Part shown: positions 24,701-54,900 of the stretch, piece by piece
Position numbering within the stretch: the first letter of the stretch is position 1
How the letters are laid out: each line of letters begins with the position of its first letter
From: Selaginella moellendorffii
Lineage: Eukaryota > Plantae > Lycopodiophyta
Reading direction: 5' to 3'
Assembly (NCBI RefSeq): GCF_000143415.4
Contig: NW_003314339.1
Span: 427,751 to 491,750, forward strand
DNA: 64,000 nt
Notes under the pieces: model-generated
The model's input: the letters and a program-made list of their open reading frames with translations, nothing else
What the model was told of the DNA's origin: nothing
The model's database searches: none
Program-made: the position numbers and the translations under genes

Positions 24701-24763
24701 AAAGCAAACAATAAGTGAGTCTCTAGAAAAGGGACCCGAGATGGAGTCTGAGATGGACCCGAG

Positions 24764-35201: not shown

Positions 35202-38200
35202 TACGCAAGCCTCATGGGTACTCTCCCCACCTCTCGCCTTTTGGTGCTCTAACCATGGGCTTAGAGCGAGGTTCCGTTGAGCCACACTAGGTATCCAAGT
35301 AGGTAGTGCCACCCACACTTGGACTGGGAGCATCGGCCAATCGATCTCCCGGGGGAACTAGAGTCGGCTCTTGAACACTTCACCAAGCTACCCCACTTGT
35401 CGGTCCATGTTCACTCTAGTCTTGGACTTCACAGTGGGCAGCTCATCACCTAACATTGGGTCCGGCCTTCCTGGGCCAAACTGGCTCCACTGCAGTCCTC
35501 CCCCTTACTATACTTTTGGAGCTCACCAAACCCCCAAGGGTCTGGGAGACGAACGCTTTGGGCTTTCACCCTCTCAGAATCGAACTCGGACTTGGACTCG
35601 GACTTGGACTCGGACTTGGACTCGGACTCGGGCTCGGACTCGGGCTCGGACTCGGACTCGGACTCGGGCTTGAGCTCGGGCTCGGTCTCGGCCTCGGTCT
35701 CGGTCTCGGTCCCGATCTCAGTCTCGGTCTCGGTCCCGGTCTCGGTCTCGGTCTCGACTTCGGACTCCATCTCGGGTCCATCTCGGACTCCATCTCGGAC
35801 TCCATCTCGTGTCCATCTCGGACTCCATCTCGTGTCCATCTCGGGTCCATCTCGGACTCCATCTCGTGTCCATCTTGGACTCCATCTCGTGTCCATCTCG
35901 GGTCCATCTCGGACTCCATCTCGGGTCCATCTCGGGTCCACCTCAGACTCCACCTCGGACTCCATCTCGGACTCCATCTCGGACTCCACCTCGGACTCCA
36001 TGTCGGACTCCATCTCGGGTCCATCTTGGACTCCATCTCGGGTCCGTCTCGGACTCAACCTCGGATCCATCTCGGACTCCACTTCGGACTCCATCTCGGG
36101 GTCCATCTCGGACTCCACTTCGGACTCCAACTCGGGTCCATCTCGGACTCCACTTCGGACTCCAACTCAAGTCCATCTTGGACACTTCCACGTTTCATGT
36201 GTTGGTCCTTTTGGGTCCCTTTTTGGAGCCTTGCTTATTGCTCGCTTCGTGCTTGTTCCTCAAGCACTTTGTTGGGAGTTCCACTCCCGCTCTCAACCTT
36301 TCAAGGCGGAGCTTTTAGTCCAAACATGTTACGCTCATTTTGTTTTCGCTTCGGCAACCACCACATGGCACCCTTCCAGCTCCACTTTCGGGCCTAGGGA
36401 TTTTGTGTCTCACAACTCCACCACCCATAGACGAAGTTTGATGTCCTCATTGAACAGTAAACCCTTTCATAAAGTAACACCCGCATGTGTTACCATTTCC
36501 ATCCTTCGCACCCAACCAATATCTGTCTATGGTTTGACACCAAAGGCTTACCATGCCTTGTCCATCCTCTAAGGAGCATAGCCTCTCCAACTTAGAGGCT
36601 CATTTGACCACTTGTGGTGGTTCTCTCCTTTTATTGGTTTAGTTCTCACTAAACCTGTTAGAGACACCTTCTCTAGCTTGATCCCATTACTCGTTCTCGA
36701 GTGGTCTCACTTTCCAGCGCTATAACCCTTGCACTTTGGAACTTTTAATTCTGACTTCTCGAAGTCAATTTCCTAGGTGTCTTCGACACCTTGCATTGCA
36801 CATATTGTGCAACTCCACTTCCTCATCCTAGGAAGTTCTCCACTTGAGGGCACCATCATCCTCTGTTCGATTTCATGCCACCTTTGGCACTGAGTTCCAG
36901 TTATCATATTTTGTGCTAGGGCTGTCCACGGCCCTATCTTTTGGCTACTTTTCCGCTCCCTCACTTGGAGCTTTTACTTCGCCAAATTGGAGCACTTACG
37001 AATCCATCCTTGGAAGTCCACTTCCTTTCCCACAAGCCGTTAGCATAAAACACATTAGTATTCCTTGGCTAACTTTGCCATTTGGATCCCTTCCATTAAA
37101 TTCCATGGCCCAAACTTGGCCACTAGTCCTTGGCTCCTATCCTTGATTGTTGCACTTAGCAACACAAGATCGTTACCTCCATTTTTGAGGTATCCCTTCG
37201 GTTCCATAGCAAAGACTCTTCTTTGCCAAGTCCGGAGGATGTTCACTCCTAGTACATCCCTTTAACATCTTCTGCTATGGGCTTTATCCACGGCCCAACT
37301 TCGTGACCCTTCCATGGGTCCCTTATAGAGACTACTTTCCTCAGACTCACTATGCTATCGCACGGACACAGCTTATTTCCCTTAGGTGCTCTTCCCACTT
37401 GATCACTTTGACCAGCCACACCATCTTAAATAGTTCAAATCAACATTTTGAACCAGGAACTTCCTTCCTTAGCCAACCAAGGACCTTGTCCTTATTTGGC
37501 CATAAGATCACCTAGTGATCTCACCTTGGCACCTTAACAGAGTTGCCAAGAGATACATAGTCTTCTAGACCTTCAAGTTGTTGACCATAACCCCGGGGGC
37601 ATCCCCTACACTTGGCGGTGCACCCAAGCCAGCCCTTATGGCCAAGGGTCCATAGCAACTGAGATTAGGTGTCCCCATTTCACTCACCACATCCTTGGTG
37701 CCACTTGCACCAAAGCGTTCAAGTTAGATATGCCGAGCTTTCACACTAAGCAATCTAACCGTGCATCACGACTCCAAGGCATCCCTCGCTTGGCGGTGTG
37801 CCCAAACCAGTCTCCCCACTGAGAGTCCATGACCACCGAAATATGAGTGTCCTCATATTCCAAACCATCACCTCGCCCTAGTGAGTTGGGACTCGAACCC
37901 AAGCACTAGAGGGTCGGGACTTGAACCCAACCTCCGTATATGCATCTACGGATGGCATCACCCAGGATACCTGGCGTGACTCCCCATGCCGGTGCACCAA
38001 CTTTCATTTAAAGCGCGCTATAGATCACAGCTTAGGAACCTAGTTCCTCCACACTACTAAGTCCTCTCACTTGACATGTTTGTGATCATGCATGGACTCC
38101 TCCATGCTTGGCCCCATGGGCCACCCTTTTTGAAGTTAACACCTTTAACTAGGGTATTTGTTCCCCCCGACTTGCCAATCTCACTTAGCAAGTCATCCGG

Positions 38201-38462
38201 CCACCATAACATGGTTCATGCATAAGCATGAAAGTCCTTAACCATTGACTTTCGTTCAAAGCCCTCTCTTTGAACACTCAGGAACTACTTCCCCAACCTT
38301 GATAGCCTCGCCTCATGGCAAGCTTCAAGACCACACTTCTGTTGCGCCACTCTAATTTCACGCATTCTATGAACCATTTACACTTGGCTTTCTAGGTATG
38401 TAGTTACCTAGAATTGTTTTTCGGGAACCTTTCAAAGGAACTCTATCCCTTTAGCTTGCCAA
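35202..38462 (-). mobile_element. Family-B element fragment: 3' LTR part (to 36414) plus non-coding internal region, interrupted by the DNA transposon
   Basis: LTR end ..GTGTCTCACA at 36414 followed by the PPT complement ACTCCACCACCC. The internal sequence is collinear with 52405-54540 and continues at 51844 after the transposon. Confidence 0.85.
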
Positions 38463-38904
38463 AAGCTCTATTTCGTTAAAGTGGGAATTGTCATTATCCC
38501 ACTTGTAAAATAAGGTTTCCAAACCTTTATATAGTATATAAATATAACAAAATTCAACTGCATTGAGGCACATGCCATTTTATTTTAAACAAGGAAATGT
38601 CTACTCAATCACTTCTCCTCCCCCTGCCACTGCTTCACCTCTCTCTTCTCCTTGTCATCGTCGTCCAATTTCTTTCCATCCTTTTAATATTGGCTCAGTT
38701 GCTCCGAGTCTAGGTGGAGCCCAAGTCCCCATTCAATCTTTACTTTCCCCTTATTAATAAAACAACTTCGTAGACTTCCAATAACATGCTGTAACACTTC
38801 TAGTATAATGCAAATCCTTTCAAAGAATTGTCTTTTAATATTAATACAATGGCATGGAACCCCATGCCATAATAAGTTACATTTTTAAATAAATACATGC
38901 CATC

Positions 38905-41900
38905 TCAGACTGTTATTTTTTGCCTCCAACGCCTATACAATAATCTTGGAATTTCATCACTCTCCACACTATCAGGATTTAAACCCAATAGTAATGCCAT
39001 CTCTTCTCTAATACGTCCACGCTCATGTTTAGTGGTCGAAGAACCCATCCGGTTGAGCAGATTATGGAGATGCGGATAGTGCTTGGCTAGACAATATACA
39101 TGCCATAAATGATGACTGGTGTCTGTCCGATCAAATGGCTTCTGATATACCGTTCCATCTGCCATTTGGTTGATTTCTGCAGCCACCTCCTGGACTGGCC
39201 GGTTCTCTATCACCATCGCTTCAAGCCGTTTTGCAAGGTCCCCCAGAACATACGGTTTCTTCTCCCTAGTTTCCATACTGCAAGAGATGGGGTGCACTGC
39301 ATATGTGTGCGTGTTCGCTGCAGTTTTAATCGGCGAGTCATCGATGATGAGGATTTCACTTGACCTAGCAGTCCGGTTCATCACTACAGCCTCTGCCTTG
39401 ACGAAGATGGGCTTGCTACCCCTCACATGGACCATAGTCAAGCAATCCTCCTGCGTTAGGAGAAAGTCAAATGGTAATATTACTCGCGTCTGATCGTGCA
39501 TCATCTGTAGCAACGTTAATGCATTGTGGCGCATCATGGATGTCCAAACTCCCAATTGCAAATTGAACCTGGCCCTCTGTTTTAAGTGTCGCATGGTCAT
39601 TATTAGATCCCGCAGTTTCTCCCGTGTGATTAATGTGAATCTGTCTCTTTTGACCAACTTGCGACCGCAGGCTTTGGAGGGTGCAGTGACATTCGAGGAC
39701 GAGCCACGCTCATGGGAGAAAAGGACACCGTTCAGATCAAAAACGATACAGTACTTTCGCCGTGACTCTGAAATGAAATGCGTCAGCATAAAAAATGGTA
39801 CAAGTCAATTTTACCATCTACAATATTAGCGAATGGTGCTCCCGATGGTCGTTCAGAGGGTTTTGGTCGAGGAAACGTGAAGGGCGGAAATACTCTCCTC
39901 TGCAATGTGGGGTCAATCGCATCCGATGGCGTGTGGGCACATGCCATTTCAGCTGTAGACTCTGGTACAACTGGCTCAACAGTGGCATGGGGTGGTTCCG
40001 ATGGCGTGTGATCACACGCCATTTCAGCTTGTGCCTCCGTTGGCAAAGTGGACATGACCGAACAGGCAGCAGGGGCGGTGTAGGGAGGTTCCAACGGCGC
40101 GTAGTCAGACGATTGGGCACACGTTGGAAATGAGGATACGACCGGCTCGGCGGCTGGGGCGGCCTCATGCGGGTCCAATGGCGCCTGGTCACCGTCAGTT
40201 GGATACGTGGACAAGATTGACTCAGTGGTATGGGCAGCATCAAGTGGAGCGTGGTCAGCTTGCTTGGCGTTGATATGGATAGTAGCCTCCACCAGCTCTG
40301 ATGACTCTTGCAGGCAAGTAGAGTCCACTGGCGGATCCATATGCATGTCCAAATATCTCCCTTCGATTGAGATGGTATCCTCCCGTGCTACTAAAAACAA
40401 ACTCATTAGCACATTGAATCGACTATACTGTATTTACCATCAACTGCTATTGAGGAACTAGGACCGATATCACTTGGGCGCACTGCTGATTCTGAAGGAT
40501 TGGACATACGTTTCGACCCTTGCTTGGCACTATCCTTCCTCGACACTAAAGGCTAGAGTTTGTATCTTAATTCAACTGAATAATCTCTACTTACCATTTC
40601 TTCTGCGACCTACATGGACAATGTTAGAAATGGTAAAAGGTTAGGAATGGATGCACTATTATTTACCTGATGGTTTGTCTTGTATGACCTTCCTCCGCCG
40701 CTCTTTGGCCACCTCAGGCTGGCCATCGTCGTCATCATCGTCATCGTCGTTATTGTGATCGTCACCATTGTGAGGACCATCCAAGTCCTCTTCGTCCTCC
40801 TCTTCTTCATCCTCCTCTTCTTCGTCCTCCTCTTCTTTGTCCTCCTCTTCGTCCTTTTGCTCTTCCTGCTCATTATCTTTCTCTGGCTCCTCATCCCCCT
40901 CTTGCATTTCTTCCATAGGCTGCTCAGGCTGGATTGCTTGTTTTTCCAGGACCATCTTGGAAAAATCATCTGGCCGAGTCTCCATCTCAAAATACAAGAC
41001 ATCCATAGCCTGTTTTAGTGCGTGACCTAGGACCGTATCCTCACCCGACTGTCTTAACATGGTTTCTGCACGTTCTTGCACCCTTCGAAGACGACAAGAT
41101 GAGAAAAACGTGGCCCTGACTTGAAAAGCATCCCTCATCCATTGTACCTCTCCATTGAGATTGGGGAAGGGGAGTCCGCCATAGGAATCTGAGTCAGAAG
41201 GTGGTGACTGGCTCCTTTCACTCAGCCCTTGATCTGCAATGAATGGCATGAGCACACACGCCATAACCGCGAGGCATTACCTATCATCTTTTCGTTGCCC
41301 TTCTTCCTTTTCGAATCAAACGCCTCTGATCCCGACGACTGTCCAACGTGCTTTCGCTTTTTATGACCACTGTCAGTTTGAGCTTGGCTGGTGCTTGCCT
41401 GTTTTGCCTTTGAAGAAGTGTCTCCTGCAAGGAATGGCATGAGACCACACGCCATTGCAAATATAATTTGTACCTCCTTTTTTCCTATTGCTTGTCTGTT
41501 TGTCCTTCTTCGACGCGCCACCAGTGCGCTTTTCAGTCCTCGTGTCTGAATATTCACAACGATCTATAATCAAAATGGCGTGAGGCCTCACGTGACCTTA
41601 CCTTGTGCAGGTTGTGACCTCGGCCTAACATCAGTAGCTGTTAATGCCGTTTCAGCATCTAGGGGTGGCCACGCTCCTGCATACAGAGCTTGTGAGATAA
41701 CATTTAAACTTAAAGTGCGTACTCACCAGGTTCGTAGAGAAGATACTGTTTTTCTTTGGCAACTGTAATTATATGCTCCATTGAAGTCACCTCTTCAATG
41801 GAGTTTGTCACCGCAACACATGGGACACCCTTGAGTAGTGCGGCTCGAAAGAATAGTCCGCCGCAGTTGTACTCGACAACGCATTTGCCCTTGGAGTCAC

Positions 41901-44510
41901 CCGCTATTGCGTTGAAGACCCAGCTGAGCATTTCCCATGCTGCACCTGGAGCTTTCTTTGGATTCGAAAGCTCCATAGCCGTCTTCAGTTCCTCAGGCAC
42001 GGGTAAATTGACCTCCCTCAGATCAATTCGATCGGCTTTGTTGAACAAAGCTGGGAAGTCACTCCAGTCCCACTCTGCTGCAGGACCAATAACAAGGGCG
42101 ACTGTGAAGATGCGGACATTCGTCGGTATCTTCTTCTTAGCCATTATCCCATGGATCTCCCGCATCTCCTTGCCTTTCAACCGAGCCTTCACCTCGTTCA
42201 AGGCCTTCCAGAACTTGTGATAGGATTCGGAGTCGTAGATCATATAGTGGACTGAAGATTCCACCTCCGCAAGTCCCACCATTAAGTCAATGATGGAGCT
42301 GACTTCGTCTGCATGAGTGATCTCCTCGTTTGTGAAGTCCATCACACAAAAGATGTTCTTGACCTGCTCATCTCCGTGGGAAACGATGCTCCTCCACCTT
42401 TGATCCTCATCCGAATTCACGTATACCCGGTAAGGTTCTCGATAGGCCTCTGCTGCGGGGTCGAGCTGTTTCTGAAGCCGGCGGTTGACATCCCTCTTAA
42501 TGAAATTTGGATACTGATCCAACTTCTCAGCTTTACTTTTCGTGGCATCCCGCAGCAGATCGATGAACTTGGGGGCCCCCTTCACGTACTCGTCGATGTC
42601 TTCATTTGACAAGTCCAGCTCTTCCATCATCTCTTGCGTGGTGTCGATGCTCACCCTCGCCACGGCCACTTGCTCGAAGATCCAATCCTTCAATAGCGCA
42701 CGAGCTCTCAGAGTCGTGCACAAGTCCTCGTATGTCACAATATGGCCGGGAGTCATTTTGGTCTTGTTGAAGACTACCTCACCACGTAGAAGAGCATTAG
42801 CCACTGTCAGAAGGTCGTCGTCGTCTAGAGACCGCGAGAAACGCAAGGCGTTGAGCTTCAAATCATTGGGCTTCCGGCCGTCCTCCACACCCATTGAGTT
42901 TAGCAACTCCTCGTCATGGTACCTCCTTAGCACATCTACCCATTTGTCAAAAACAACTTTTGTCGCGAGTAGAATGTTATGGATGCTGAGTGTGTCATTG
43001 ACCCCCAGTGTTTTCGAGAGAAGACTCGAGAATTCCTGCAATGGAAATGGCGTGAGGCCACATGCTATGCCACATGCAACGAGGCTTACCTGCCAGGCGC
43101 TAGTTGCTAGTGCACGTCCTTGTCTTGGTTTTTGTGGCTTCTTCAGTTGAACCCAGAGCTTCCGTGTTCGTGCCAATGTCTCGTGCAGACCTGATTTGTA
43201 GCACGTTTCTTGCTTGACATTCTGCGTGTGGGAGATGTATATGATAGATCGGAGGGGCGAGTTGCCTTTTATCAGGCGGACAACTCTTGTCTTGAAGACT
43301 TTCTTCACCTCCTCGCCCACCATAATATCCACAACTATCTGTTGCATCGCCAAGCTAGAATGCTGCCCGGAGACGGCATAGAACCGGATGTTCTGATCGT
43401 CCAACACCTTCCTATTGATCAAGTCTGGAAACCTCGTCTCGCCCTTCATTGTTCGGTAGTAGGGGATCACGTCTGCGATGTCGGGTGTTACTGGACTTGC
43501 CAGCATCTTCTGCTTCAGTTTCTCCACCCACTCATCAGATACTAGCCTGTGGTTGTATTTGCTTTGGATCTCGATACGGCTCACGTCGATTGTATATACT
43601 TTGTTGGAATAGTAACAAGTACTATTATCTGCGACGATTTTTGCTGCCTCTTCTTGCTCTTTCTGCTCTTTGCGGCTCTTCTTTTTGGTGGGTGTAGTGT
43701 TCGAACCCGAGGCAATGGCATCACCGAGTAGCTTCTTTTTTGGAGCAGCAGAGTCGGACGTCGGCTTGAGCTTGACCACCCTTTTCTGCTTCGGGGTAGT
43801 TTCCAGATCGACCCCCTTCCCCTTCGCTTCACAAACTGGAGGCACTCTCAACGGCTCAATGTTGGAATATAGTTTTTGAACATCACCGTAGGTGAAGTCC
43901 GTGGATTCCATGTGATCTTTATAGACCCGCAGCGTCTTTGAAATTGTGGGCCTCCTGGACAACCTCTCCCTAGCTCCCTCTAGGAATTCCTCATAGCCGC
44001 TGCCCCCCTCCGGGAAGCCGCTAGGATGTGCAAGGTGGATCTTGAAGGCGGACGCTGTCTCTACCACAAGTGCCAGTCCATATTCTTGCATGGAACTGCA
44101 TGGAGTGTCTGTCACTTGGATGAGGATCCCTATGCATTCTTTTCTCCCACCATCTGTGTTGTACAGCCTCAGATCCTCACCTTCCATCCCGAAAGTCCAA
44201 CTAGTGAGCTCCTCCCCCTTCTCTGCATCCACATTGACAGTGGCTGGAAGAAGAACGCAATTCCTCGCCTGTTCAGAAATGCACAACAATTAGAGCTGAC
44301 AGATGAAAAGCTAGCAGCTGGAAATAACGTGAGGCCACACACCATTCACCACTGCATCAGATGTCTTGAGGCTACATCCTAAGATGGCGTGAGGCTACAC
44401 GCCATCTGTAACCGGACTGCACTCGAGAGCCCAATCGGTGCATGCCAATGTTGCTACTGAATGGCATGTGGCCTCATGCCATTTTCTACTTCGTCTAAAA
44501 GACTTACCAT
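38905..44510 (-). CDS. Transposon-borne multi-exon protein (~1600 aa): ParB/Srx-like domain, degenerate amino-MTase-like fold, acidic/basic linker, FCP1/NIF-like HAD phosphatase domain
   Basis: Manual splicing with GT-AG introns 43036-43089, 41677-41726, 41546-41601, 41425-41473, 41234-41280, 40610-40666, 40546-40594, ~40391-40509 and 39768-39814 keeps one open frame joining the 859-, 201-, 209- and 294-aa ORFs. Motifs: FYAVSGQHSSLA; VVEYNCGGLFFRAALLKG..CVAV; IVFDLNGVL..VWTS..IIDDSPIK. The start ATG at 44510 is tentative. Confidence 0.7.
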
Positions 44511-46090
44511 TTGAAGCCGAATGGAGGCCGTGACAATCGAGGCCGGACTCGCTGGCGAATGTGCACTGTGTGTGCAGCGGATCGTAGCAGCAAGGCTACT
44601 CTGCCACTTACAGTTGGAGAGTGGCGCTGAAATCTCCTAGGACGCCAAGTGGGCTGCGTGTGGGTGGCGGAGTGGGCGGCGGAGTTGGCGGCGAAGTTAC
44701 AAACTGGGTGTGTCTTGAAGTGGACGCCGATGCACACGAGCGCGATGCGAGCGCGAGTGTGATGCAAGCGCGAGTGGACGCCGATGCACACGAGAAACCT
44801 GTAGAGAAGTGAGCGTGATCGCGAGTGGGAGCGCGAGTGTGATGCGAGCGCGAGCGCGAGTGTGCGAGCGCGAGTACAAAGCAAAATGCAAAACCTAACC
44901 TCACACGCGCGAAATGTCACAACGGTTGGTAATCCCGCCACGTCATCATTCCTCAGACTTGGGCGCCACCATTAATTTCTGGATTGCCGCGCGCATGCAA
45001 GCACGCAAAATCCAAAAGAAATCCGCAACATCATCATTCCTCGGACTGCATGCACGCGAAATCCAAAAGAAAGATCATGATTGGGATATCATTTAATATC
45101 CTCACTATATTTATACCATGCATGATTGGATATTCCAAAGCATCTTGTATTTCCAAAAATGGCAGATGTTCAGCTAAATAAAGAAATTCTATCTGTTTCT
45201 ATTTTTCTCTCAAATCAATATTATAGCGTGTGGGCTCATGCAATTTTGAACCAAAGAAACCCAAAAAACGTTGGACCCAAAATATTTTGAAAAAGCCCAA
45301 AAAACCCTAAACATTTTAAACCCAAAAATCCAGGCGTCCTGTGGCGTTATTCCTTCAATGGCGTGTGGGCGCATGCCATTTTCAGGGCCAAATGCTGAAT
45401 GGAGAAAAATTCCCTTTCAGTGCAAATGCTGCAAGAGGCAGATGCCAAGCACAAAGGACTGTAACTACCTCACATGACACAGATAAACTTTTCTCTATTT
45501 GGCAAAGATAAACTTTATAGCGTGTGGGCTCATGCAATTTTGAACCCAAGAAATGCACCAAAAAATTCTCGGCGTCATCTGGCATTATCTCTTGAATGGT
45601 GTGGGGCCGCATGCCATTTTCAGGGGCACATAGGAGTATATTCCTAGGATATTCTGACACGCGCGAGATTTTTTTGAGTTTTCTAGAGATCCAACCGTTA
45701 GATCGCAACTAGATTTTACAGAATGGTATACAATGTCTTTCTTGATGACCCTGCAAAGAAGCATCTCGATCGGACACCACATGAGACCACACGAGCCTTA
45801 CAATGTTTCAGGGGCATTTGCCATAGATCCGACCGTTATTTTGCTCCAAGATTTTATAGTTTGGTGTGCATTGACCTTTCCATCGAAACTGCAAAGGGAC
45901 ATCACAATCAGATGCGGGATCACAAGAAACTAACTTCACTAACTCTGGTTTCACCAAGATCTACGTAAGGAGTTATGAAATGAAAGGACCCTCTCTATTG
46001 AAATGTGTTTATGGTCCTAGGGGCATTGTGACATATCAAAGGATTTTGCATCAAGTTTTGTATTTGCATGTTTATCAAGCTACTGAATTG

Positions 46091-46117
46091 CTAAACCCTA
46101 AACCCTAAACCCTAAAC
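46091..46117 (+). repeat. Short interstitial plant telomere repeat (CCCTAAA)~4 / telo-box cluster
   Basis: ctaaaccctaaaccctaaaccctaaac, in the region between the two divergent transposon genes. Confidence 0.85.
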
Positions 46118-47411
46118 ATGTGGCAAATGCTGCGTGAAGAAAGATGCCCTTTCTGGGCAAATGCTGTAAAAGGCAGATGCCGAGCAGATGTATCTCAGGC
46201 TAGCGAAGGGGACAAACGAAAGCTAGCTATAAATATGACGGGATGCAAATAGATTACTAGGCTGGTCCTACGAAAATCAAAAACCATAATTGAAAACATT
46301 GAAAATGCAAAAAGAAAGGTTTATAATATTTTTGAATTTTAGGCAACCAAAGGAATGTAAGTAGGGCATGTGTTTGTAAGTTTAAAAATGCCTCAACCAC
46401 TTAAATTCCCAAGTAAATAAAGCTGTTTCTATTTTTGGTACAGGTAAACTTTATAGCGTGTGGGCTCATGCAATTTTGAACCCAAAAATGCACCAAAAAA
46501 TGCTCGACTAGCATTATTCTTTGAATGGCGTGTGGCCTTATATTGCCATAAATGGACGTACACACACAGCATAATTATTCCTTTACACGGCGAATAATCT
46601 TGGCGCGGATCGCTGACATGGCATGGCAAAGTTCGAATCACTGACATGGCACAGCTGGATCGAGGCAAGGACATGATGTGACAAAGTTCAACCTCCGATA
46701 GCAAAGTCTAGAAGCTACTCAGTTTGAAATTTGTCAGAGGAATCATAAGATCTGGTTTGTCAGAGGATTTGATGTGACGTTCAAGCGTGTGTTATTTTTG
46801 AATTCTCGAACTCATTCCTAGGTCTATCATTTTTGTGCGCCGTGTTCTTGGTTCCGCTGAGCGCAGTGAGCGCTGCTTGTGTAAGCGGCGTTGTGGGCTG
46901 TGGTTTATGCGTTTACGAGCGGTTGCGGCATTGCGAGCGCCATTGCGAGCGGCAGTTTATGCGAGTGGCAGTTTGTGCGAGCGGCGCTACGAGCAGTTGC
47001 GGTGTTGCGAGCGGCGCTACGAGTAGTTGCGGTGTTGCGAGCGGCACTGTCTTTGGTGTGGCTACCGCTTCCTCTTGATATTCGGCACTTGTGCTTCCTG
47101 GTATGTTCACCATGGAATGGCTTAGGACCACATTTAAAAATGGCATGAGGCCACATGCCATCTTGGGCCCTTGCAATTTCATGGCTAGCGTATTGTCATG
47201 TATGTTTTTACTTGCCTGCAGCTGTGTGTATATCAAGATGGCATGAGGCCTCATGCCAATTTTGTGAATGCGAAATTTCACGTGGGTGTCAATAGCATGT
47301 TTGAATAATGGCATGTGGCCTCATGCTATTGAGGTTGTTTGGTATGTTATGATTTAGGCCATTCTCCAATCATTTTTTGTATGGTCTTAACTTCTTTTCT
47401 GCACTTTCAGA

Positions 47412-50400
47412 ATGGCCTTCAGGGTTGGGGAAAAGGTTTACATTTTGAATGGTGGGAAGAGAGTTGCAAAAGGGACCCTTGTGTCTATGGATCGGAACTT
47501 TGTTATACACTGTCAAAGGCTTGGGGAAGGCAATGCTGCTGTATCAGTAGAGACTGTCTTCGATGGGAATGTGGTCGCTATTGAACGAGGAGAGATGGTC
47601 GTCGGGGTAAATGTTGTTGTTGCCTTGAAAAATCTTCAGAAGAAAGCAGATGTTGGGGACAGCGCAAGTGCGACGCATGTTCCCTCCGTGGATCTTAAGA
47701 ACCGTGCTACATGGATTCAGGCAAAAGTGTTTCTAAACAACCCCGAGGGGGAGGTGGTAGCTGAGGGCTTAGCCACAGTTGTCGATCCAAGAGATGCGGT
47801 TGCTAATCAAGAATTGGGCTGGGATGATATTGGAGTTGCGATTTTAGAGGTTGTTGACACAGAAGAAAACAGTCTGACTATTGGAAGCATTGTGCGGTGG
47901 AAATTGAGGCACTTAGTGTTTGAGAATGTGAAGGATTCACAATCAAACACCACTACAACTGATGACAAAACATCTCTTCATGGGAAAAGAAAGTACACCT
48001 TCCTAAAGCGCAGCCAAAGGGATCTGAGCAACGAACCGAAAAGGCAGAAAATGGCGATGGAGGTTCGAATGGTCTCGACAGTTGCTTGTTGCAAGAGGAG
48101 GTGCTGTCAACATGCTGATTGGGATGCTATTGAAGAGGAGAGAGCAAGATACAAGACATTGTCCTGGAAGGCAGCTCGCAATTTTGTGTATGAGGCATTA
48201 CGGTCATCTGTTGATGCTTCAGAACATCAGGTGGGGGGCATGGTCTTCCAGAGGGGTTTGGTCTGCATGAAGGCATGGAGAATCATTTATGGAGTCCCTC
48301 GAACCACATTCTACAGAATCAAAACTGAGTTCGAGGAACAAAGGGTTCAACAGGCAGTCCATGGGAACGACGGTACGCACAAAACCAGGGGTCATGTTGT
48401 ATATGGAGAGGCAATCTTCAAGAGGTTTGTCGAGACATGTAGCGAGCAGCAACCACATAAAACCCGCCTCTTGGAAGATGGAACACGAGACACCCAACGA
48501 GTTCTCCCTTCCATGTATACCAAGGGGGCCATATTGGAAGATGTGAATCGGGAACTCCAGAGTAATGGCTACAGGAAGCTGAGCTAATCTAGATTTAGTA
48601 GATTGTGGAGCAACAGGTTCAGGGATGTGAGTATAGGAAAGTACTCCAGCTTTTCAAAGTGTGACGAGTGCACTGCTATCAAAATGGCTTTGTCGAAGAA
48701 TTCTTGCAGCGCTCAAGAGCGAGAGACGTTGGTTAGAAGGCGGCTCGACCACAACATCGAGCAGAGAAGCTGCAGGACTGCATATTATCATAACAGGATT
48801 CTCTCCATGGAGAGACCTGACTCTTACCTCTGCATCATCCATGACAAAATGGACCAGAAAAAGACGTGCTTACCTCGACTCAATCCTGCCCCCAAGCTGC
48901 CTGTGTCTCTGTTTGGCATAATCGCTCATGGGCATGGTGCCCAGAACTATGGGAACTTCTTTGTACCTCTATGGGGTGGCGGGGGTGCAAACATGATGAT
49001 TGCGTCCCTAGCAAAACACTTAAGGTCTCTGCAAAGTGCGCAGACTGAGCTGAAAGGCCAACCCTTGCATAAGGCCCTTGTCGATCGAACCCCATACAGG
49101 GTTCAGCTGGAGGAGGAGCAAAGGCTTGCAGTATCGCGTGGGGCCCCATGCCATCCCAGTGAATATGTTGGCCGTCAGATTGTAGGGTTATCACGTGAGG
49201 CCTCATGCCATTCCGACGAGGCTGGTCGCCCGGTGAATGCACAGCCTCATCCAAACGAAGCAGAATCTCAAGGAAGTTTTTGCGGCCGATGTGGCCTTCC
49301 ACCCCATCTTCTGCTCCAAACAGACAATGCTGGCAGTGAGAACAAAAACATGTACGTCTTCGCGTACTTGGCGATGCTTGTTGCCAAAGGCATATTTGAA
49401 ACGGTTACACTTGGCTTTCTCATGGTTGGGCACACTCATGAAGACGTCGATGCCATGTTCAGTCACCTGGCAGAGTCCCTCCGGCGATCCAATGTCCTCA
49501 CCCTCCCACAACTCTACGATGAATTCCAAAATTGCATCAAAGGCACTGTTGAAGCTGCACTTCTGACAGAGGTTCCAGACTTTAAGGGGTTTGTAAGAGG
49601 CTACATCAGGGATGGATCCGAAACGCTGATTGGCCACTCCAAGCCTCTTCAGTTTCATTTCAGCATGTGTGACGGTGCTCTAGTGATGAGGTACAAGATG
49701 AGAGAATGGGACACAGTGTGGCTGCCAATGGACGGCATTGAACTCTTCAAGAGAGATCCCATAACTGGGGAACCTATGATTCCTTAGGGTTCCCCACGGC
49801 CGATGCACCCGGATGGACTCAAAGACCAGGAAAGTATAGTGGCCGGGATTAGATAGCATATTGCCTTCTGGAAGAGGGGGTTGGTGTTTGGTGGAGAATC
49901 CTATTTTCAGAGGTGCAAGCCTTTGCTCGAATACTGGGAGAAGATTATATCTGCTATCCAAAATGGGCCGGTTGTATATGAAGAATTGGAAGAGTCCTTT
50001 TGGCCAGAACCCAGAGCACCAGATAGTAGCGGAACAATGTCCTCTGGAAATGCAGTGACAGATAACGATGTTGAGGATCACTATTGTGGGCCGAGGAACA
50101 AGAAGCCGGATTCAGCATTCAATCCAGTACAGGTCTGCAAAGGAATGGTCGTGCTTGTCAGACCCAGTAATAAAAAACAAATGATATGGGTGGGGCGCTG
50201 CATCACTGATGCAGAGGAGGACGCGGAAACTAACTCCTTCAATGTAACTGTGGAGTGGTTCAAGCCAAGTTTCGGATATACGAACGATTGCCTAGAAAAG
50301 AGATGGGTGCTGAATCCAAGGGATCCCAGCATGAGCATATCAGTGGATAATGTTGTGCATGGTTGGATGCGGAAGCAGAATGCCACCATCACCTTGCCAG

Positions 50401-50459
50401 ACCATGCAAGAGATGCAGCAAGAGCATTCATAACCCGGGTTCAAGGTGAGATTCATTAA
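47412..50459 (+). pseudogene. DDE/D transposase (Sola-like) with three premature stops
   Basis: One frame of ~1015 codons broken only by TAA 48585, TAG 49785 and TAG 49854. Motifs FSKCDEC..H, IIHDKMDQKKT.LP, LQTDNAGSENKN and FLMVGHTHEDVDAMFS. Superfamily assignment is tentative. Confidence 0.85.
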
Positions 50460-51992
50460 TATTCCTTTACTAAGTTTCTAATGTATTTTATTTCAAGGTG
50501 AACAATCCGAATCTGAATCAGAGGAGGCGTGATGGCATGTGGCCTTACGCCATTCCTAGGTGAGATGATACAAATAACAAGTATAAATTCTTAGTTGTTC
50601 TAGCAAATCTTACTTAAAGTTCAAGGTGAACAAGCCGAATATGAATTCATCGGATTGTTATAACAAATTGCGAGGTGATGGCATGAGGCGATACGCCATT
50701 TGAGAGTGGTAGCCATTCCTATATGAGGTGAGTGAAGTATTTATTAGAAATACCTCATTCAATTGTGCACTTCTAAGTCTTGGTCCACTTAGTACTGTTT
50801 GCATGTTTTTATTTTAATTCTTTCTCTAAAATGTTATTTAGCATGTGGCTTCATGCCATTGCTCTCCACAATCATGCATTGAATTTCTATCCTTGCATAA
50901 TACTTCTCCATATATATAGCATGTGCGCACATGTGATATGGTTCATTAGGCCTGATATAGTGTGTGAGGTAAAACAAAGATGATGTGACATATGCATTTA
51001 CCAATCACACGTGCATAAATCTAATAATATGGCGTGTGGCCCATATTAATGGCACATAAACCCATATTGTGGGCTTACGTGCTTTATGTACCATCATTCC
51101 CTTGCAGCGTGTGTGTTGGTTTCCTTTTATAACACAACGAACTCCATATTTTAGGGTGAAGAGCGTTCTCATGGCAAGCACAAAATCTGTAAGTGAGGCA
51201 GAAAAGGAGACGGAGAAGGAGATAGGTGAAGATGTAGAATATATAAGTCTTCCAAACTCCCCGTACTATACTCCAGGTGATCATTTTTCTGAACAAACGG
51301 CAACATTAACAACTATCGAGAACGCCCCAGTAACGTCAGAGACAACAATCCAAAGCAAAACAACTGACCCGGAGAAGGATGATAGTACCGCTGAGAGTAC
51401 CAAAAAGGAGGTGTCCACTAGCGCTTAGGCTTATAATGGCGTGTGCCCTCATGCCATTTACTTGATCACCAAATACCTTTTTCCCTTTGCACTAGTATAT
51501 CTTAATACCGGTCTGAGAAATAGAATGGCATGTGCCTGGCTAATAGGAATGATGTTCATCTTGGAAAGCTCACCACACGCTCAATGAACAAACAAATAGT
51601 GTGTGCGCGCATGCCATCGCTCTTCTTTAGCTTCAGATTCGGCTTGTTCACCTTGACAATGAGATTTATTATACAACTAGATGGACTCAGTCTGGACATA
51701 AGGTCACCGCGCTAGTCACCATGCCCCAGATATGTCTAGCCCCTGGACAAAAAACATATAATTTCACGTCATTTTCAAATACTTGAAAATTTGTACCTAG
51801 TCCCATTTTACTGAATAAATCCCACTTTAACGAAATAGAGCATCCAAGGCCTCTCCTTTCGCAAGTTTTCCAATTGCCATATAGTCTTATATGGACAATC
51901 CCATGTTTTTGACTTTCAATGGCATCTTGGTTGCTAGTAAAAACATGTTTGAGTGCCCACTTGATTCTCCACTCCCAACTTGCATAACCACC

Positions 51993-54900
51993 CTCGGGTC
52001 CATCTCGGGTCCACCTCAGACTCCACCTCGGACTCCATCTTGGGTCCATCTCGGACTCCATTTCGGACTCCATTTCGGCTCCATCTCGGGTCCACCTCGG
52101 ACTCCACCTCGGACTCCATCTCGGGTCCATCTCGGACTCCATCTCGGACTCCATCTTGGGTCCATCTCGGACACTTCCACGTGTCATGTGTTGGTCCTTT
52201 TTGGGTCCCTTTTTGGAGCCTCACCTATGGCTCGCTTCGTGCTCATTCCTCGAGCACTTCGTTGGGAGTTCCACTCCCACTCTTGACTTTTCAAGTCGGA
52301 GCTTTTGGTCCAAACGTGTTACGCTCGTTTGGCTCTTGCTTTGGCCACTACCACGTGGCGCCCTTCCAGCTCCACTTTGGGGCCTAGGGATTTTGTGTCT
52401 CACAACTCCACCACCCATAGACGAAGTTCGATGTCCTCATCGAACGGTAAACCATTTTATAAAGTAACACCCGCATGTGTTACCATTTCCATCCTTGGCA
52501 CCTAGCCAATATTTCTCAATGGTTTGACATTGAAGGCTCACCATGCCTTCTCCATATTCGTCAATGGTTTAACATTGAAGGCTCACCATGCCTTTTGCAT
52601 ATTCCTCAATGGTTTGACACCAAAGGCTCACCATGCCTTGCCTATCCTCTAAGGAGGGTAGTCTCTCCAACTTAGAGACTGATTGGACCATATGTAGTGG
52701 TTCTCTCCTTTTATTGGTTTAGTTCTTGCTAAACCTCTTAGAGACCCTTCTCTAAGTCAATCCCACTACTCCTTCTCGAGTAGTCTTAATTTCCATCTAT
52801 TGAACGTTTGCACCTTGGAACTTTTACTCTTTTGACTTTTGGAAGTCAATTTCCTAGGTGTCTCCAACACCTTGCATTGCACAAATTGTGCAACTCCACT
52901 TCCCCATCCTAGGAAGTTCATTACTTGAGGGCACCCTCATCCTCTCTTCTATTTCGTGCCACCTTGGGCACTAACTTCCATTTATCATATTTTGTGCTAG
53001 GGCTGTCTATGGCCCTATCATTTGGCTACTTTACCATTCCCTCCCTTGGAGCTTCCACTTTCGCCAAATCGGAGCAATTCGGAATCCATCCTTGGAAGCA
53101 CACTTTCTTTCCCGCAATTTGTTAGCGTCCAACACATTAGTGTTCCTCGCCTAACTTTGTCACTTGGATTCCTTCCAAGGGATTCCACGGCCCTATCTTG
53201 GCCACTCATCTTTTGCTCCTATCCGTTGATTGTTGCACCGAGCAACATCGAATCTCTACCTCCCTCCTTGAGGTATTCTTTTGATTCCATAGCAAAGGCT
53301 TTGCTTTGCCAAGACTAGGGTGTTCACCCCTAGTAAGTCTCTTTAGCATCTTCTGCTGTGGGCTCTATCCACGGCCCAACTTTGTGACCCTCCCATGGGT
53401 CTATTTAGAGACTACTTCCCTTGGACACACTATGCCATCGCAATGACATAGCTCATTTCCCTAAGGTGCTTTTCCCACTTGGTCACCTTGACCAAGCCAC
53501 ACCATCATAAATAGTTCAAATCAACACTTTGAACTAGGAACCTTATTCCTTCACCTCACAAGGACCTTGTCCTTGTTTTTAGCCATAAGATCACCTAGTG
53601 ATCTAACCTTGGCACCTTAATAGGTTTGCCAATAGGTAATAGGTCTCCTCGACCTTTAAGTTGTTGACTATGACCCCGGGGGCATCCCCCACACTTGGCG
53701 GTGCGCCCAAGCCAGCCCTTCCAGCCAAGGGTCCATAGCAACTGAGGTTGGGTGTCCCCATCTCATTCACCTCGTCCTTGGTGCCCCCTTGCACTAAGGT
53801 GTTCAAGTTAGATATGCTGAGCTTTCACACTAAGCAATCTAACCGTGCATCACGACTCCGAGGCATCCCTCGCTTGGCGGTGTGCCCAAACCAGTCTCCC
53901 CACTGAGAGTCCATGACCACCGAAATATGAGTGTCCTCATATTCCAAATCATCACCACGCCCTAGTGATTTGGGACTCGAACCCAAGCACTAGAGGGTCG
54001 GGACTCGAACCCAACCTCCGTATATGCATCTACAGACAGCATCACCTAGGATGCCTGGCGTGACTCCCCACGCCGATGCACCAACTTATACTCAAAGCGC
54101 GCTATAGATCACAGCTTAGGAACCTAGTTCCTCCCCACTGCCAAGTCCTCTCACTTGACATGTCTGTGATCATGCATGGACTCCTCCATGCTCGGCCCCA
54201 TGGCCCACCCTTTTTGAAGTTATCACCTTCAATTAGGGTATTTGTTCCCCCGACGTGCCAATCTTGCTTGGCAAGTCCTCCGACCACTGTAACATGGTTC
54301 CTACATAAGCGTGAAAGTCCTTGACCATCGACTTTCGTTCAAAGCCCTTTCTTTGAACACACGGGAACTATTTCCCTAACCTTGATAGCCTTGCCTCATG
54401 GCAAGCTTCAAGACTACGCTTCTGCTGCGCCACTCTAATTTCACGCGTTCCATGAACCATTTACACTTGGCCTTTCTAGGTACTAAGCTACCTAAAATCG
54501 TCTTTGGGAACCTTGAAGGAACTCTGTCCCTTAGCTTGCTAAGGCCCCCCCTTTTTGCAAGCTTTCCAATTACCATATAGTCTAACATGGACAATTCCAT
54601 ATTTTAGACTCTCCATGGCATCACGGTTGCTAGCGGCAACACCCTTGAGCCCCCACTTGATTCTCCACTCCCAGCTGGCATAACCAACCTTGGTTATGCC
54701 CTTCAATTCCTATGGTTCGGTTCTATCCCCTTACTTCTTGCTTTTGGCTTCACACCTTTCCTTCGGTCATTCTCCTCCAGACCAGGAGGATAGCTTTGCA
54801 CTTTCTATCATGCCTTAGCAAGTATTTTTAGGGATGAACCTACCCGATAGCCTAGGGAGTGGTTCCTCAATCCAGGTATGCTCACCCTATAATCCCACAC

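What the first reader, a model, noticed from the sequence alone, without database searches (positions are those of the whole stretch)
38463..51843. Giant plant DNA transposon pairing a ParB-like protein with more than 20 parS-like palindromes: a candidate self-recognition or anti-silencing system
Seen: a cleanly bounded 13.4-kb TIR element (22-bp TIR, CCAA TSD, empty-site paralogue at 54531-54560) with two divergent genes, and a 22-bp palindrome ATGGCRTG-N6-CAYGCCAT scattered along its length that I did not find elsewhere in the window. Known: bacterial ParB CTPases load on palindromic parS sites and spread, and Arabidopsis VANDAL transposons use VANC proteins that bind short motifs accumulated in their own non-coding DNA to remove silencing sequence-specifically. 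Inference: the accessory protein binds the palindromes as a dimer and marks its own element family, either to counter methylation or to assemble the transpososome over a long element. I am not aware of such a ParB/palindrome system described for a Sola-like plant transposon.
Basis: partly seen in the sequence, partly recalled or inferred. Interest (0 to 1): 0.95.

Follow-up and report, generated by a model that had tools for sequence, protein, structure and literature searches.

The report
Spikemoss transposon studded with private palindromes
A 13.4-kb cut-and-paste transposon in the spikemoss Selaginella carries 23 copies of its own 22-base palindrome plus a large second gene built from three apparently disabled enzyme-like domains. 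This looks like a built-in self-recognition system, but similar transposon genes were already reported in algae in 2025 and the protein that binds the palindromes is still unknown.

Summary
The element has a perfect 22-bp TIR, a CCAA duplication and an empty-site paralogue. It holds 23 copies (2 or fewer mismatches) of ATGGCRTGWGGCCWCAYGCCAT, all inside the element (0.04 expected by chance).

The + gene is a DUF7869 (Sola1-type) DDD transposase, here broken by one in-frame TAA. The - gene encodes three domains:
- a ParB/Srx-fold N-domain (Z 11.7 to ParB), with the CTP-binding GERR motif replaced by GQHS and no ParB helix-turn-helix detected;
- a beta-class DNA-methyltransferase-like domain with degenerate motifs;
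- an FCP1/NIF-like domain with DxNxV instead of DxDxT.

The palindromes avoid conserved coding sequence (p = 2e-4). They fill tiny 47-54-nt introns, UTRs, the intergenic region and disordered coding linkers. Relatives in the liverwort Riccia and in four metagenome contigs each carry a different private palindrome. One intron at a conserved position holds the Selaginella palindrome here and three Riccia palindromes there.

The best reading is that these are dimer-binding sites for an element-encoded protein, a self-addressing system like VANDAL/VANC. The ParB-like protein is the likelier binder, but this is not shown and the transposase remains a rival. RNA-seq shows the family essentially silent.

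This scan found the same family repeatedly on other DNA of this genome. Algal papers from 2025 describe the gene type and adjacent inverted-repeat arrays, so this is a new variant of a known kind.

The parts
38459..38462 (.). left target-site duplication CCAA
38463..38486 (+). left end; perfect 22-bp TIR at 38465-38486
38849..51617 (.). 23 copies (2 or fewer mismatches) of the 22-bp palindrome ATGGCRTGWGGCCWCAYGCCAT. Starts: 38849, 39926, 40001, 41243, 41434, 43047, 44384, 44461, 45223, 45358, 45517, 45596, 46453, 47140, 47238, 47308, 49133, 49190, 50532, 50678, 50838, 51436, 51596. A half-site lies at about 38565-38580.
38905..44507 (-). accessory gene (multi-exon; model inferred from ORFs and splice signals, without RNA support): ParB-N fold, helical middle, MTase-like domain, acidic/disordered linker, NIF/FCP1-like domain
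38905..39804 (-). NIF/FCP1-like HAD phosphatase exon; catalytic DxDxT reads FDLNGV at 39724-39741
   Evidence: (PF03031, E 3e-6)
39815..40390 (-). disordered linker exon; two palindromes (39926, 40001) lie in frame in a 75-bp duplication and are read as 'EMACxHTPS'
41234..41280 (-). 47-nt GT..AG intron made almost entirely of one palindrome (inferred)
41425..41473 (-). 49-nt GT..AG intron with one palindrome (inferred)
41713..42400 (-). beta-class N6/N4 DNA-methyltransferase-like domain; motif IV-like VMDFTN at 42328-42345, motif I-like VVEYNCGG at 41857-41880
43036..43089 (-). 54-nt intron after the W-Q codon, at a position conserved in relatives, with one palindrome; it stays in frame, so the 859-aa ORF reads through it
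43201..43602 (-). ParB/Srx-fold N-domain; invariant SGQHS at 43357-43371 in place of ParB's GERR
44508..47411 (.). divergent intergenic/promoter region with 8 palindromes
47412..50456 (+). Sola1-type DDD transposase gene; CCKRRCC at 48087-48107; D motifs at 48834, 49311 and 49428; DUF7869 at about 49296-49706; in-frame TAA at 48585-48587
51820..51843 (-). right end; TIR at 51820-51841
51844..51847 (.). right target-site duplication CCAA
54478..54600 (+). paralogous empty site (single CTAA at 54539-54542)

Best explanation
This is a recently inserted copy of a Sola1-type cut-and-paste transposon of Selaginella moellendorffii. Its own transposase is now disabled. The 22-bp palindromes are double-stranded DNA sites for a dimer of an element-encoded protein. 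They have accumulated wherever coding constraint allows, so the whole 13 kb is tagged with a private address. The most likely binder is the accessory protein, a eukaryotic descendant of phage/bacterial ParB_N-DNA-methyltransferase fusions with an added FCP1-like domain. All three of its enzyme-like domains have altered catalytic motifs, so it would act as a site-specific scaffold, not as an enzyme. A plausible outcome is family-specific control of the element's chromatin or transcription, as VANC does for VANDAL, or bridging and compaction of a long element for transposition. Shown here: the boundaries, palindrome enrichment and confinement, the ParB-N fold, the MTase-like and NIF-like homology, lineage-specific palindromes, and turnover of the palindrome within an intron at the same position. 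Inferred: that a protein binds the sites, which protein it is, and what follows from binding.
For: 1. All 23 sites lie inside the element (0.04 expected).
2. Only 4 of 23 sites lie in the 55% of the element that is ORF-supported coding (binomial p = 2e-4). Those 4 sit in disordered or variable linkers. Three tiny introns of 47-54 nt consist largely of one site each.
3. The centre GGCC is conserved, while positions 6/17 and 9/14 vary independently between the two arms. There is no stem covariation, so the unit looks like a dimer site on duplex DNA and not a hairpin.
4. The TIR is unrelated to the palindrome.
5. Relatives have the same layout with different palindromes: Riccia L001 (34 copies) and L012, TCGGGAYGCRTCCCGA; L002, CAACGCSGCGTTG, including about 15 tandem copies just upstream of the ParB-like ORF; L006, CCCACGGGTGWWCACCCGTGGG, 18 copies; L011, ATGGACGGSCCGTCCAT, 25 copies; L010, GTATCGGCGGNCCGCCGATAC, 19 copies.
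6. The intron after the W-Q/K codon is conserved in position. It holds 1 Selaginella palindrome here and 3 Riccia palindromes in Riccia.
7. In all 4 loci where the accessory region is available (window, L001, L012, L002), the ParB-like gene and palindromes occur together. Two loci with full flanks but no ParB-like gene (L008, L009) have no palindrome.
8. ParB-N fold: Z 11.7. MTase-like: profile hit to M.RsrI, E 2e-4. The Atlas model of the paralogue P0001 resembles ParB_N + N6_N4_Mtase fusions.
9. Literature: ParB-like accessory genes with adjacent inverted-repeat arrays occur in transposons with an unrelated transposase (bioRxiv 10.1101/2025.02.11.637652). VANC is a precedent for lineage-specific motifs accumulated in non-coding TE DNA (PMC5735166).
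Against: - No binding data exist.
- The ParB similarity is limited to the nucleotide-binding N-domain. No ParB-type HTH was found, and no other DNA-binding domain was identified; the middle region (residues about 419-640) gave no Pfam or Atlas match.
- GERR is replaced by GQHS, so CTP-dependent clamping is doubtful.
- L006, L010 and L011 have palindromes next to the transposase with no detectable ParB-like or MTase-like sequence in the DNA available. In all three the region where the divergent gene should lie is cut off.
- The co-occurrence count is small (4 versus 2 loci) and not phylogenetically independent.
- In three RNA-seq runs (about 1.4 Gb read from each) only 8, 1 and 7 reads lie on 38850-44550, and none is spliced. 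Neither expression nor the intron model is supported by RNA.
Confidence: 0.5

Rival explanations
1. The palindromes are binding sites for the Sola1 transposase itself, for example its N-terminal region with the CCKRRCC motif. They would act as internal enhancers of transpososome assembly or as autoregulatory sites, and the ParB-like protein would do something else.
For: Transposases commonly bind repeated internal or subterminal motifs (established knowledge: Ac, Mu). L006, L010 and L011 show private palindromes around a related transposase gene with no ParB-like sequence detectable in the DNA available. No DNA-binding domain was identified in the accessory protein.
Against: The TIR, which the transposase must recognise, has no similarity to the palindrome. 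The sites are spread over the whole element and are not concentrated at the ends. Inverted-repeat arrays accompany ParB-like accessory genes in transposons with an unrelated (Plavaka) transposase (bioRxiv 10.1101/2025.02.11.637652). Transposase-only loci L007, L008 and L009 show no palindromes.
Confidence: 0.25
2. The palindromes recruit a host factor, such as a dimeric transcription factor or a chromatin protein, and work as promoter or enhancer modules for the two divergent genes.
For: Eight of the 23 sites lie in the 2.9-kb divergent intergenic region. In L002 and L006, tandem arrays sit directly upstream of genes.
Against: Each lineage has a completely different palindrome. That is hard to reconcile with conserved host factors. 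Many sites are in introns, 3' UTRs and the 3' end of the element.
Confidence: 0.1
3. The palindromes act as hairpins in RNA or single-stranded DNA, for example in splicing control of the tiny introns, as small-RNA precursors, or as cruciforms during transposition.
For: Several sites occupy most of 47-54-nt introns, 9-11 nt from the 3' splice site. The unit can form an 8-9-bp stem.
Against: There is no compensatory change between arms: positions 6/17 are complementary in 8 of 23 sites and positions 9/14 in 6 of 23. The would-be loop GGCC is conserved. Most sites lie outside the inferred introns: in the intergenic region, the 3' ends of the element and in-frame coding linkers. No small RNA or splice data are available.
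Confidence: 0.08
4. The palindromes are selfish or by-product mini-repeats with no function for the element, spread by gene conversion, slippage or a mini-insertion mechanism.
For: Some copies lie in larger local duplications: a 75-bp duplication at 39922-40029 and 70-78-nt repeats at 45181-46488.
Against: The sites are strictly confined to the element and avoid conserved coding sequence. The pattern has arisen or been kept, with different sequences, in at least five other lineages. Flanks of most copies are unrelated and no target duplications are seen.
Confidence: 0.07

Closest known systems
Sola1-1_Ec32 of Ectocarpus (Genome Biol 2025, PMC12477816)
   Same: A giant Sola1 DNA transposon with an accessory gene on the strand opposite the transposase. 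That gene encodes a ParB-like domain plus an N4C/N6A-type DNA methyltransferase domain. The authors propose that such proteins bind and modify their own transposon.
   Different: That paper does not mention palindromes or inverted repeats (0 text hits). It mentions no FCP1/NIF-like domain and describes the methyltransferase as predicted active. Here the MTase motifs are degenerate, and the host is a land plant.
Plavaka PAG3 of the red alga Bostrychia moritziana (bioRxiv 10.1101/2025.02.11.637652)
   Same: A ParB-like N-terminal domain in a transposon accessory protein, with arrays of inverted repeats next to the gene. The authors suggest the protein binds its own element.
   Different: The transposase superfamily is different (Plavaka/CACTA-like). 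The partner domain is a 2OG oxygenase, not MTase-like plus NIF-like. The repeats are tandem arrays adjacent to the gene, not sites dispersed through introns, UTRs and coding linkers over the whole element.
VANDAL21 / VANC21 anti-silencing system of Arabidopsis (Nat Commun 2017, PMC5735166)
   Same: An accessory protein of a DNA transposon works with short motifs accumulated in that element's non-coding DNA. The motifs differ between related families, which gives family-specific recognition.
   Different: VANC is unrelated in sequence and fold. Its motifs are short and not palindromic, and binding and loss of methylation were shown experimentally. Here nothing functional has been shown.
Bacterial ParB-parS (and Noc, KorB) CTP-dependent clamps
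   Same: The N-terminal domain has the same fold (Z 9-12), and the DNA partner is a palindrome of 13-22 bp present in several copies.
   Different: The CTP-binding GERRxR motif is absent (GQHS). No ParB HTH or C-terminal dimerisation domain was found. There is no Pfam ParB hit even at E of 10 or less. There are tens of dispersed sites instead of a few clustered ones.
Phage/bacterial ParB_N + N6_N4_Mtase fusion proteins
   Same: The domain order is the same (ParB-N, then a beta-class MTase). They are the nearest structural neighbours of the Selaginella paralogue P0001, and the family profile hits M.RsrI motifs X and I.
   Different: Motif IV DPPY is replaced by D(F/V/A)T(N/H), and motif I in the window is EYNCGG. 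There are also a long helical insert, introns, and a C-terminal FCP1-like domain.
En/Spm TnpA and its 12-bp subterminal motifs
   Same: A second element-encoded protein binds repeated motifs, often in inverted pairs, and affects both transposition and silencing (established knowledge).
   Different: TnpA motifs are subterminal, not spread across the whole element, and the protein is unrelated.

Membership tests
Sola1 superfamily of DDD DNA transposons | 4-bp target-site duplication and terminal inverted repeats | tested here: met
   CCAA on both sides, a 22-bp perfect TIR and an empty-site paralogue
Sola1 superfamily of DDD DNA transposons | DDD transposase of the Sola type | tested here: met
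   PF25273 DUF7869, E 4.6e-43. There are 52 homologues, nearly all with DUF7869, in liverworts, a stramenopile alga and a bivalve. Three conserved Asp motifs lie at 48834, 49311 and 49428. That they form the catalytic triad is inferred.
Sola1 superfamily of DDD DNA transposons | clusters with reference Sola1 (not Sola2 or Sola3) transposases | not testable with these tools
   No Repbase or reference Sola sequences were available. The Sola1 label rests on earlier scan notes and on the analogy with Sola1-1_Ec32.
ParB/Srx fold superfamily | N-terminal domain fold | tested here: met
   AF2 with a 13-sequence alignment, pLDDT 79. All but the last of the 50 listed Foldseek hits are ParB/Noc/KorB/PadC/Srx/SbnI-type chains. 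VIA-align Z 11.7, rmsd 1.9 A over 95 residues.
ParB CTPase clamps (ParB, Noc, KorB) | GERRxR CTP-binding motif | tested here: not met
   SGQHS is invariant in 13 family members (G, Q and H invariant); both arginines are absent.
ParB CTPase clamps (ParB, Noc, KorB) | helix-turn-helix parS-binding domain after the N-domain | tested here: inconclusive
   Structural matches stop at ParB residue about 132. The following region has no Pfam or Atlas match.
ParB CTPase clamps (ParB, Noc, KorB) | sequence-profile membership (Pfam PF02195) | tested here: not met
   No hit even at E of 10 or less. The family profile against PDB sequences gave no ParB hit.
beta-class N6A/N4C DNA methyltransferases (PF01555) | motif X / motif I (FxGxG) SAM-binding region | tested here: met
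   The family profile hits M.RsrI residues 217-269, E 2e-4. PF01555 matches below threshold in Riccia and L003 relatives. Relatives read DFFSGG; the window reads EYNCGG.
beta-class N6A/N4C DNA methyltransferases (PF01555) | catalytic motif IV (D/N/S)PP(Y/F/W) | tested here: not met
   The aligned position reads DFTN (window), DVTH, DATH and DLAR in relatives. Assignment of this position as motif IV is by spacing and alignment only.
FCP1/SCP (NIF) CTD-phosphatase-like HAD domain | Pfam PF03031 match | tested here: met
   Window E 3.2e-6, 27.4 bits (cut-off 21.8). Riccia exon E 7e-11.
FCP1/SCP (NIF) CTD-phosphatase-like HAD domain | catalytic DxDx(T/V) motif | tested here: not met
   The window reads D-L-N-G-V, with the second Asp replaced by Asn. 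Relatives were not resolved.
VANC-type sequence-specific anti-silencing systems | accessory protein binds its own element's motifs and removes DNA methylation | not testable with these tools
   This needs binding and methylation experiments. Only the pattern of lineage-specific motifs in non-coding TE DNA is shared.

The most novel reading that the evidence does not exclude
Land-plant Sola1 transposons carry a portable addressing system. A scaffold protein built from three inactivated enzyme folds (ParB-N, DNA methyltransferase, CTD phosphatase) binds as a dimer to a private palindrome. The element seeds that palindrome into every tolerant position, even inside 50-nt introns and disordered coding linkers. 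Protein and palindrome co-evolve, so each family coats only itself, either to escape or redirect silencing or to fold a 13-kb element for excision. This would be a ParB-derived counterpart of VANC that arose independently.
Probability: 0.3. Interest if true: 0.85.

Novelty: new variant of a known kind. Interest (0 to 1): 0.58.

Why it matters
How transposons tell 'self' from other repeats and counter host silencing is known mechanistically for very few families, VANDAL/VANC above all. This family offers a compact, directly testable candidate: a defined 22-mer, a defined protein with separable domains, and natural variants in liverworts and other lineages that carry different palindromes. That makes specificity-swap experiments possible. 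The family also shows that a phage/bacterial ParB-methyltransferase module, so far reported in algal transposons, persists in land plants, with its catalytic motifs altered and a CTD-phosphatase-like domain added. That points to a binding or scaffolding role, not an enzymatic one. Finally, binding sites packed into tiny introns and even into coding linkers are an unusual example of selection for site density on a mobile element.

Tried and rejected
- Word-index protein search with the 859-aa ORF found nothing. An exhaustive phmmer search found only 17 weak hits, three of them spurious low-complexity matches (P0003, P0004, P0007).
- Single-sequence AF2 of the whole ORF was useless, pLDDT 33.
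- The profile of the ParB-like region against PDB sequences gave no significant hit. Only structure comparison revealed the fold.
- A JGI metagenome scan with the ParB-like alignment found no confirmed locus.
- RNA reads gave too few reads and no joints, so the intron model and expression stay unconfirmed. The X1 contigs behave like DNA because they cover an inferred intron.
- I tried to use L006, L010 and L011 as 'palindromes without ParB' counter-examples. I rejected this as inconclusive because the divergent gene runs off the fetched DNA in each. HMM and tblastx found nothing in what is available.
- I searched for Riccia TIRs and for TIR similarity across loci and found none.
- I tested whether the R/Y positions reflect CpG decay. 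It is plausible (19 of 46 half-sites keep CpG), but it cannot be separated from tolerated variation without other copies.
- The Atlas feature search of the middle region gave no usable hit.
- I considered an introner-like origin for the tiny introns. I rejected it for the 43036-43089 intron, because its position is conserved in relatives that carry other palindromes.


Full report
**1. Observation**

The element is real and sharply bounded.
- The 22-mer GCTCTATTTCGTTAAAGTGGGA occurs exactly twice in the 64-kb window, in inverted orientation, at 38465-38486 and 51820-51841.
- Both ends are flanked by CCAA (38459-38462 and 51844-51847).
- A paralogous sequence at about 54478-54600 joins the left and right flanks around a single CTAA.

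This is an insertion with a 4-bp target-site duplication into another repeat.

The pattern ATGGCRTG-N6-CAYGCCAT has 10 exact copies and 23 with 2 or fewer mismatches. All lie between 38849 and 51617, against 0.00 and 0.04 expected from dinucleotide shuffles. Of 41 exact half-site 8-mers in the window, 38 are inside the element. The 'spacer' is itself conserved as WGGCCW, so the unit is a 22-bp palindrome with consensus ATGGCRTGWGGCCWCAYGCCAT. It is the dominant repeat of the element.

**2. Host and state of the copy**

Host ORFs in the window (a GRAS/DELLA protein and topoisomerase VI subunit A) cluster at 90% identity or more with Selaginella moellendorffii proteins. The window is therefore from this lycophyte or a near-identical haplotype.

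The + strand gene (47412-50456) has:
- PF25273/DUF7869 (E 4.6e-43);
- 52 homologues, nearly all with DUF7869, in liverworts, a stramenopile alga, a bivalve and many metagenome contigs;
- three conserved Asp motifs.

With the 4-bp TSD this fits a Sola1-type DDD transposase. I could not compare it with reference Sola1-3 sequences.

The reading frame carries an in-frame TAA at 48585-48587. Riccia and L006 relatives align straight through that position with a sense codon, so this copy's transposase is probably broken, despite identical TIRs.

Contigs of another sample cover parts of the accessory gene at 95-99% identity, so other copies or alleles exist. Three raw RNA-seq runs of the species (about 1.4 Gb read from each) put only 8, 1 and 7 reads on 38850-44550, with no spliced joints. 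In those samples the family is essentially silent. My intron model therefore rests on sequence signals and homology only.

**3. The accessory gene (- strand, about 38905-44507)**

*ParB-like domain.* Pfam finds nothing in the 859-aa ORF, even at E of 10 or less. An exhaustive phmmer search of 1.8 billion representatives gave 17 weak hits. The true relatives align over residues about 200-400 and share an invariant 'SGQHS' (alignment A1). They come from Riccia sorocarpa, unnamed ENA/Logan assemblies, and a host-like Selaginella gene.

Folding this region with A1 gave pLDDT 79. All but the last of the 50 listed Foldseek PDB hits are ParB, Noc, KorB, PadC, sulfiredoxin or SbnI-type chains. VIA-align gives Z 11.7, rmsd 1.9 A over 95 residues to M. 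xanthus ParB. The ParB/Srx fold is therefore confirmed.

The match covers only ParB residues about 37-132, the nucleotide-binding N-domain. The parS-reading helix-turn-helix is not matched. The CTP-binding GERR is GQHS. The 'parS-like' analogy therefore has no direct structural support.

*Methyltransferase-like domain.* Four lines of evidence point the same way for the C-terminal third of the ORF:
- A 5-sequence family profile hits M.RsrI motifs X and I (E 2e-4).
- Riccia and L003 relatives hit PF01555 below threshold.
- Atlas features point to N6_N4 methyltransferases.
- The Atlas model of the Selaginella paralogue P0001 is structurally closest to phage/bacterial ParB_N + N6_N4_Mtase fusions.

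The motifs are degenerate. The position expected for DPPY reads DFTN (DVTH, DATH and DLAR in relatives). Motif I is EYNCGG in the window, against DFFSGG in relatives.

*Phosphatase-like domain.* The last exon matches NIF/FCP1-like phosphatases (E 3e-6; Riccia E 7e-11). Its DxDxT reads DLNGV.

All three enzyme-like modules thus carry altered catalytic motifs. That suggests a binding or scaffolding protein. This last step is inference.

**4. Where the palindromes sit**

Only 4 of the 23 sites lie in the 55% of the element that is ORF-supported coding (binomial p = 2e-4). Those four are in disordered or variable linkers:
- Two lie in a 75-bp duplication and are translated in frame as 'EMACxHTPS'.
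- Two lie between the first and second Asp motifs of the transposase.

Three sites make up most of tiny GT..AG introns of 47, 49 and 54 nt (41234-41280, 41425-41473, 43036-43089), each ending 9-11 nt before the 3' splice site. Two sit in a 5' intron and one in the 3' UTR. Eight lie in the 2.9-kb divergent intergenic region and five between the transposase stop and the right end.

The two arms vary independently. Positions 6/17 are complementary in 8 of 23 sites and positions 9/14 in 6 of 23, while the centre GGCC is conserved. This fits recognition of duplex DNA by a symmetric dimer better than a selected hairpin. The TIR shares nothing with the palindrome.

**5. Relatives**

- A Riccia sorocarpa locus (L001) has the same divergent layout: transposase, then ParB-like, MTase-like and NIF-like genes. 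It carries 34 copies of a different 16-bp palindrome, TCGGGAYGCRTCCCGA (0.01 expected). A second Riccia copy (L012) is the same.
- L002 has CAACGCSGCGTTG in about 25 copies, including about 15 tandem 26-bp units directly upstream of its ParB-like ORF.
- Three further Sola1-type loci have their own palindromes: L006 (18 copies), L011 (25 copies) and L010 (19 copies). In all three the divergent gene runs off the available DNA. Whether they encode the ParB-like protein is undetermined.
- Transposase fragments in L007, Heterosigma (L008) and Calypogeia (L009) have neither palindromes nor the accessory gene.

The intron after the W-Q/K codon is conserved in position across the family. ORF-called relatives read into it as 'V...', and the RefSeq model of P0001 joins WQ to an EF-containing exon. 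In Selaginella this intron holds one Selaginella palindrome. In Riccia the intron at the corresponding position (11681-11876) holds three Riccia palindromes. The sites have therefore been replaced in place. That argues for selection tied to a changing recognition specificity and against a one-off insertion.

**6. Mechanism**

I judge it most likely (about 0.8) that the palindromes are protein-binding sites that give the element a private address.

The accessory protein is the favoured binder, at about 0.5 overall:
- It co-occurs with palindromes in every locus where it can be assessed.
- Its ancestors are DNA-acting proteins.
- Inverted-repeat arrays accompany ParB-like accessory genes in transposons with an unrelated transposase (Bostrychia preprint; scan notes on a Selaginella MULE, which I did not test).

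The transposase N-terminus is a serious rival (0.25). Host-factor sites, hairpins and non-functional mini-repeats are less likely.

What binding achieves is open. Anti-silencing as in VANC (PMC5735166), transcriptional control through the CTD-phosphatase-like module, or compaction and end-bridging of a long element are all possible.

**7. Novelty**

The gene type is published. Ectocarpus Sola1-1_Ec32 has a ParB-like + DNA-methyltransferase gene on the strand opposite the transposase (PMC12477816). Bostrychia Plavaka PAG3 has a ParB-like domain with adjacent inverted-repeat arrays, and the authors propose self-binding. I found no paper on Selaginella or liverwort elements of this kind.

This scan had already noted and followed up the same family on several other pieces of this genome, with similar conclusions.

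What appears new:
- occurrence in land plants;
- the added FCP1-like domain;
- altered catalytic motifs in all three domains;
- element-wide dispersal of sites into tiny introns and coding linkers;
- lineage-specific replacement of the palindrome at a conserved intron.

I class it as a new variant of a known kind, and it is well suited to experiment.

Noticed in passing
L005:10001-11425 (S. moellendorffii GL377575.1; protein P0001 = EFJ30523 / XP_024528744): A 451-aa host-like gene lies among ordinary genes (ArfGap, VQ) and has no palindromes nearby. It is homologous to the middle and MTase-like part of the accessory protein and has the same degenerate motif I (EYGCGG). It may be a domesticated or stranded fragment of the transposon gene. 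A second allele or paralogue exists (EFJ23012).
   Followed up: partly
window:48585-48587: An in-frame TAA splits the transposase frame into 391-aa and 394-aa ORFs. Relatives have a sense codon here and no intron.
   Followed up: yes
window:39922-40029: A 75-bp tandem duplication carries two palindromes inside an open exon, giving a repeated peptide AEMAC(D/A)HTPS. Binding-site DNA is tolerated as coding sequence in a disordered linker.
   Followed up: partly
window:52000-58000 and 24000-32000, 36000-38400: The element is inserted in another repeat family. Flanks with strongly negative GC skew recur, and the empty-site paralogue lies only 2.7 kb downstream. I did not characterise this repeat.
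   Followed up: no
window:2014-3459 and 8561-9808: Intact host genes (a GRAS/DELLA-family protein and topoisomerase VI subunit A) identify the genome as Selaginella moellendorffii.
   Followed up: yes
L006:929-1323 and 9272-9490; L010:19-817: In two metagenome-derived Sola1 relatives the private palindrome forms tandem arrays (periods of 47-59 bp). The arrays sit upstream of the divergent genes and are separated by 7-8 kb of AT-rich repeats, unlike the dispersed pattern in Selaginella and Riccia.
   Followed up: partly
window:40720-40914: A long acidic (D/E-rich) low-complexity coding stretch in the accessory gene linker shows up as 9-15-nt periodic direct repeats.
   Followed up: no
window palindromes, positions 6 and 17: The only strongly degenerate half-site position toggles CpG with TpG/CpA (19 of 46 half-sites keep CpG). 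The Riccia palindrome varies in the same way (ACGCGT/ATGCAT). This could be decay of methylated CpG inside the binding site, or tolerated variation.
   Followed up: partly
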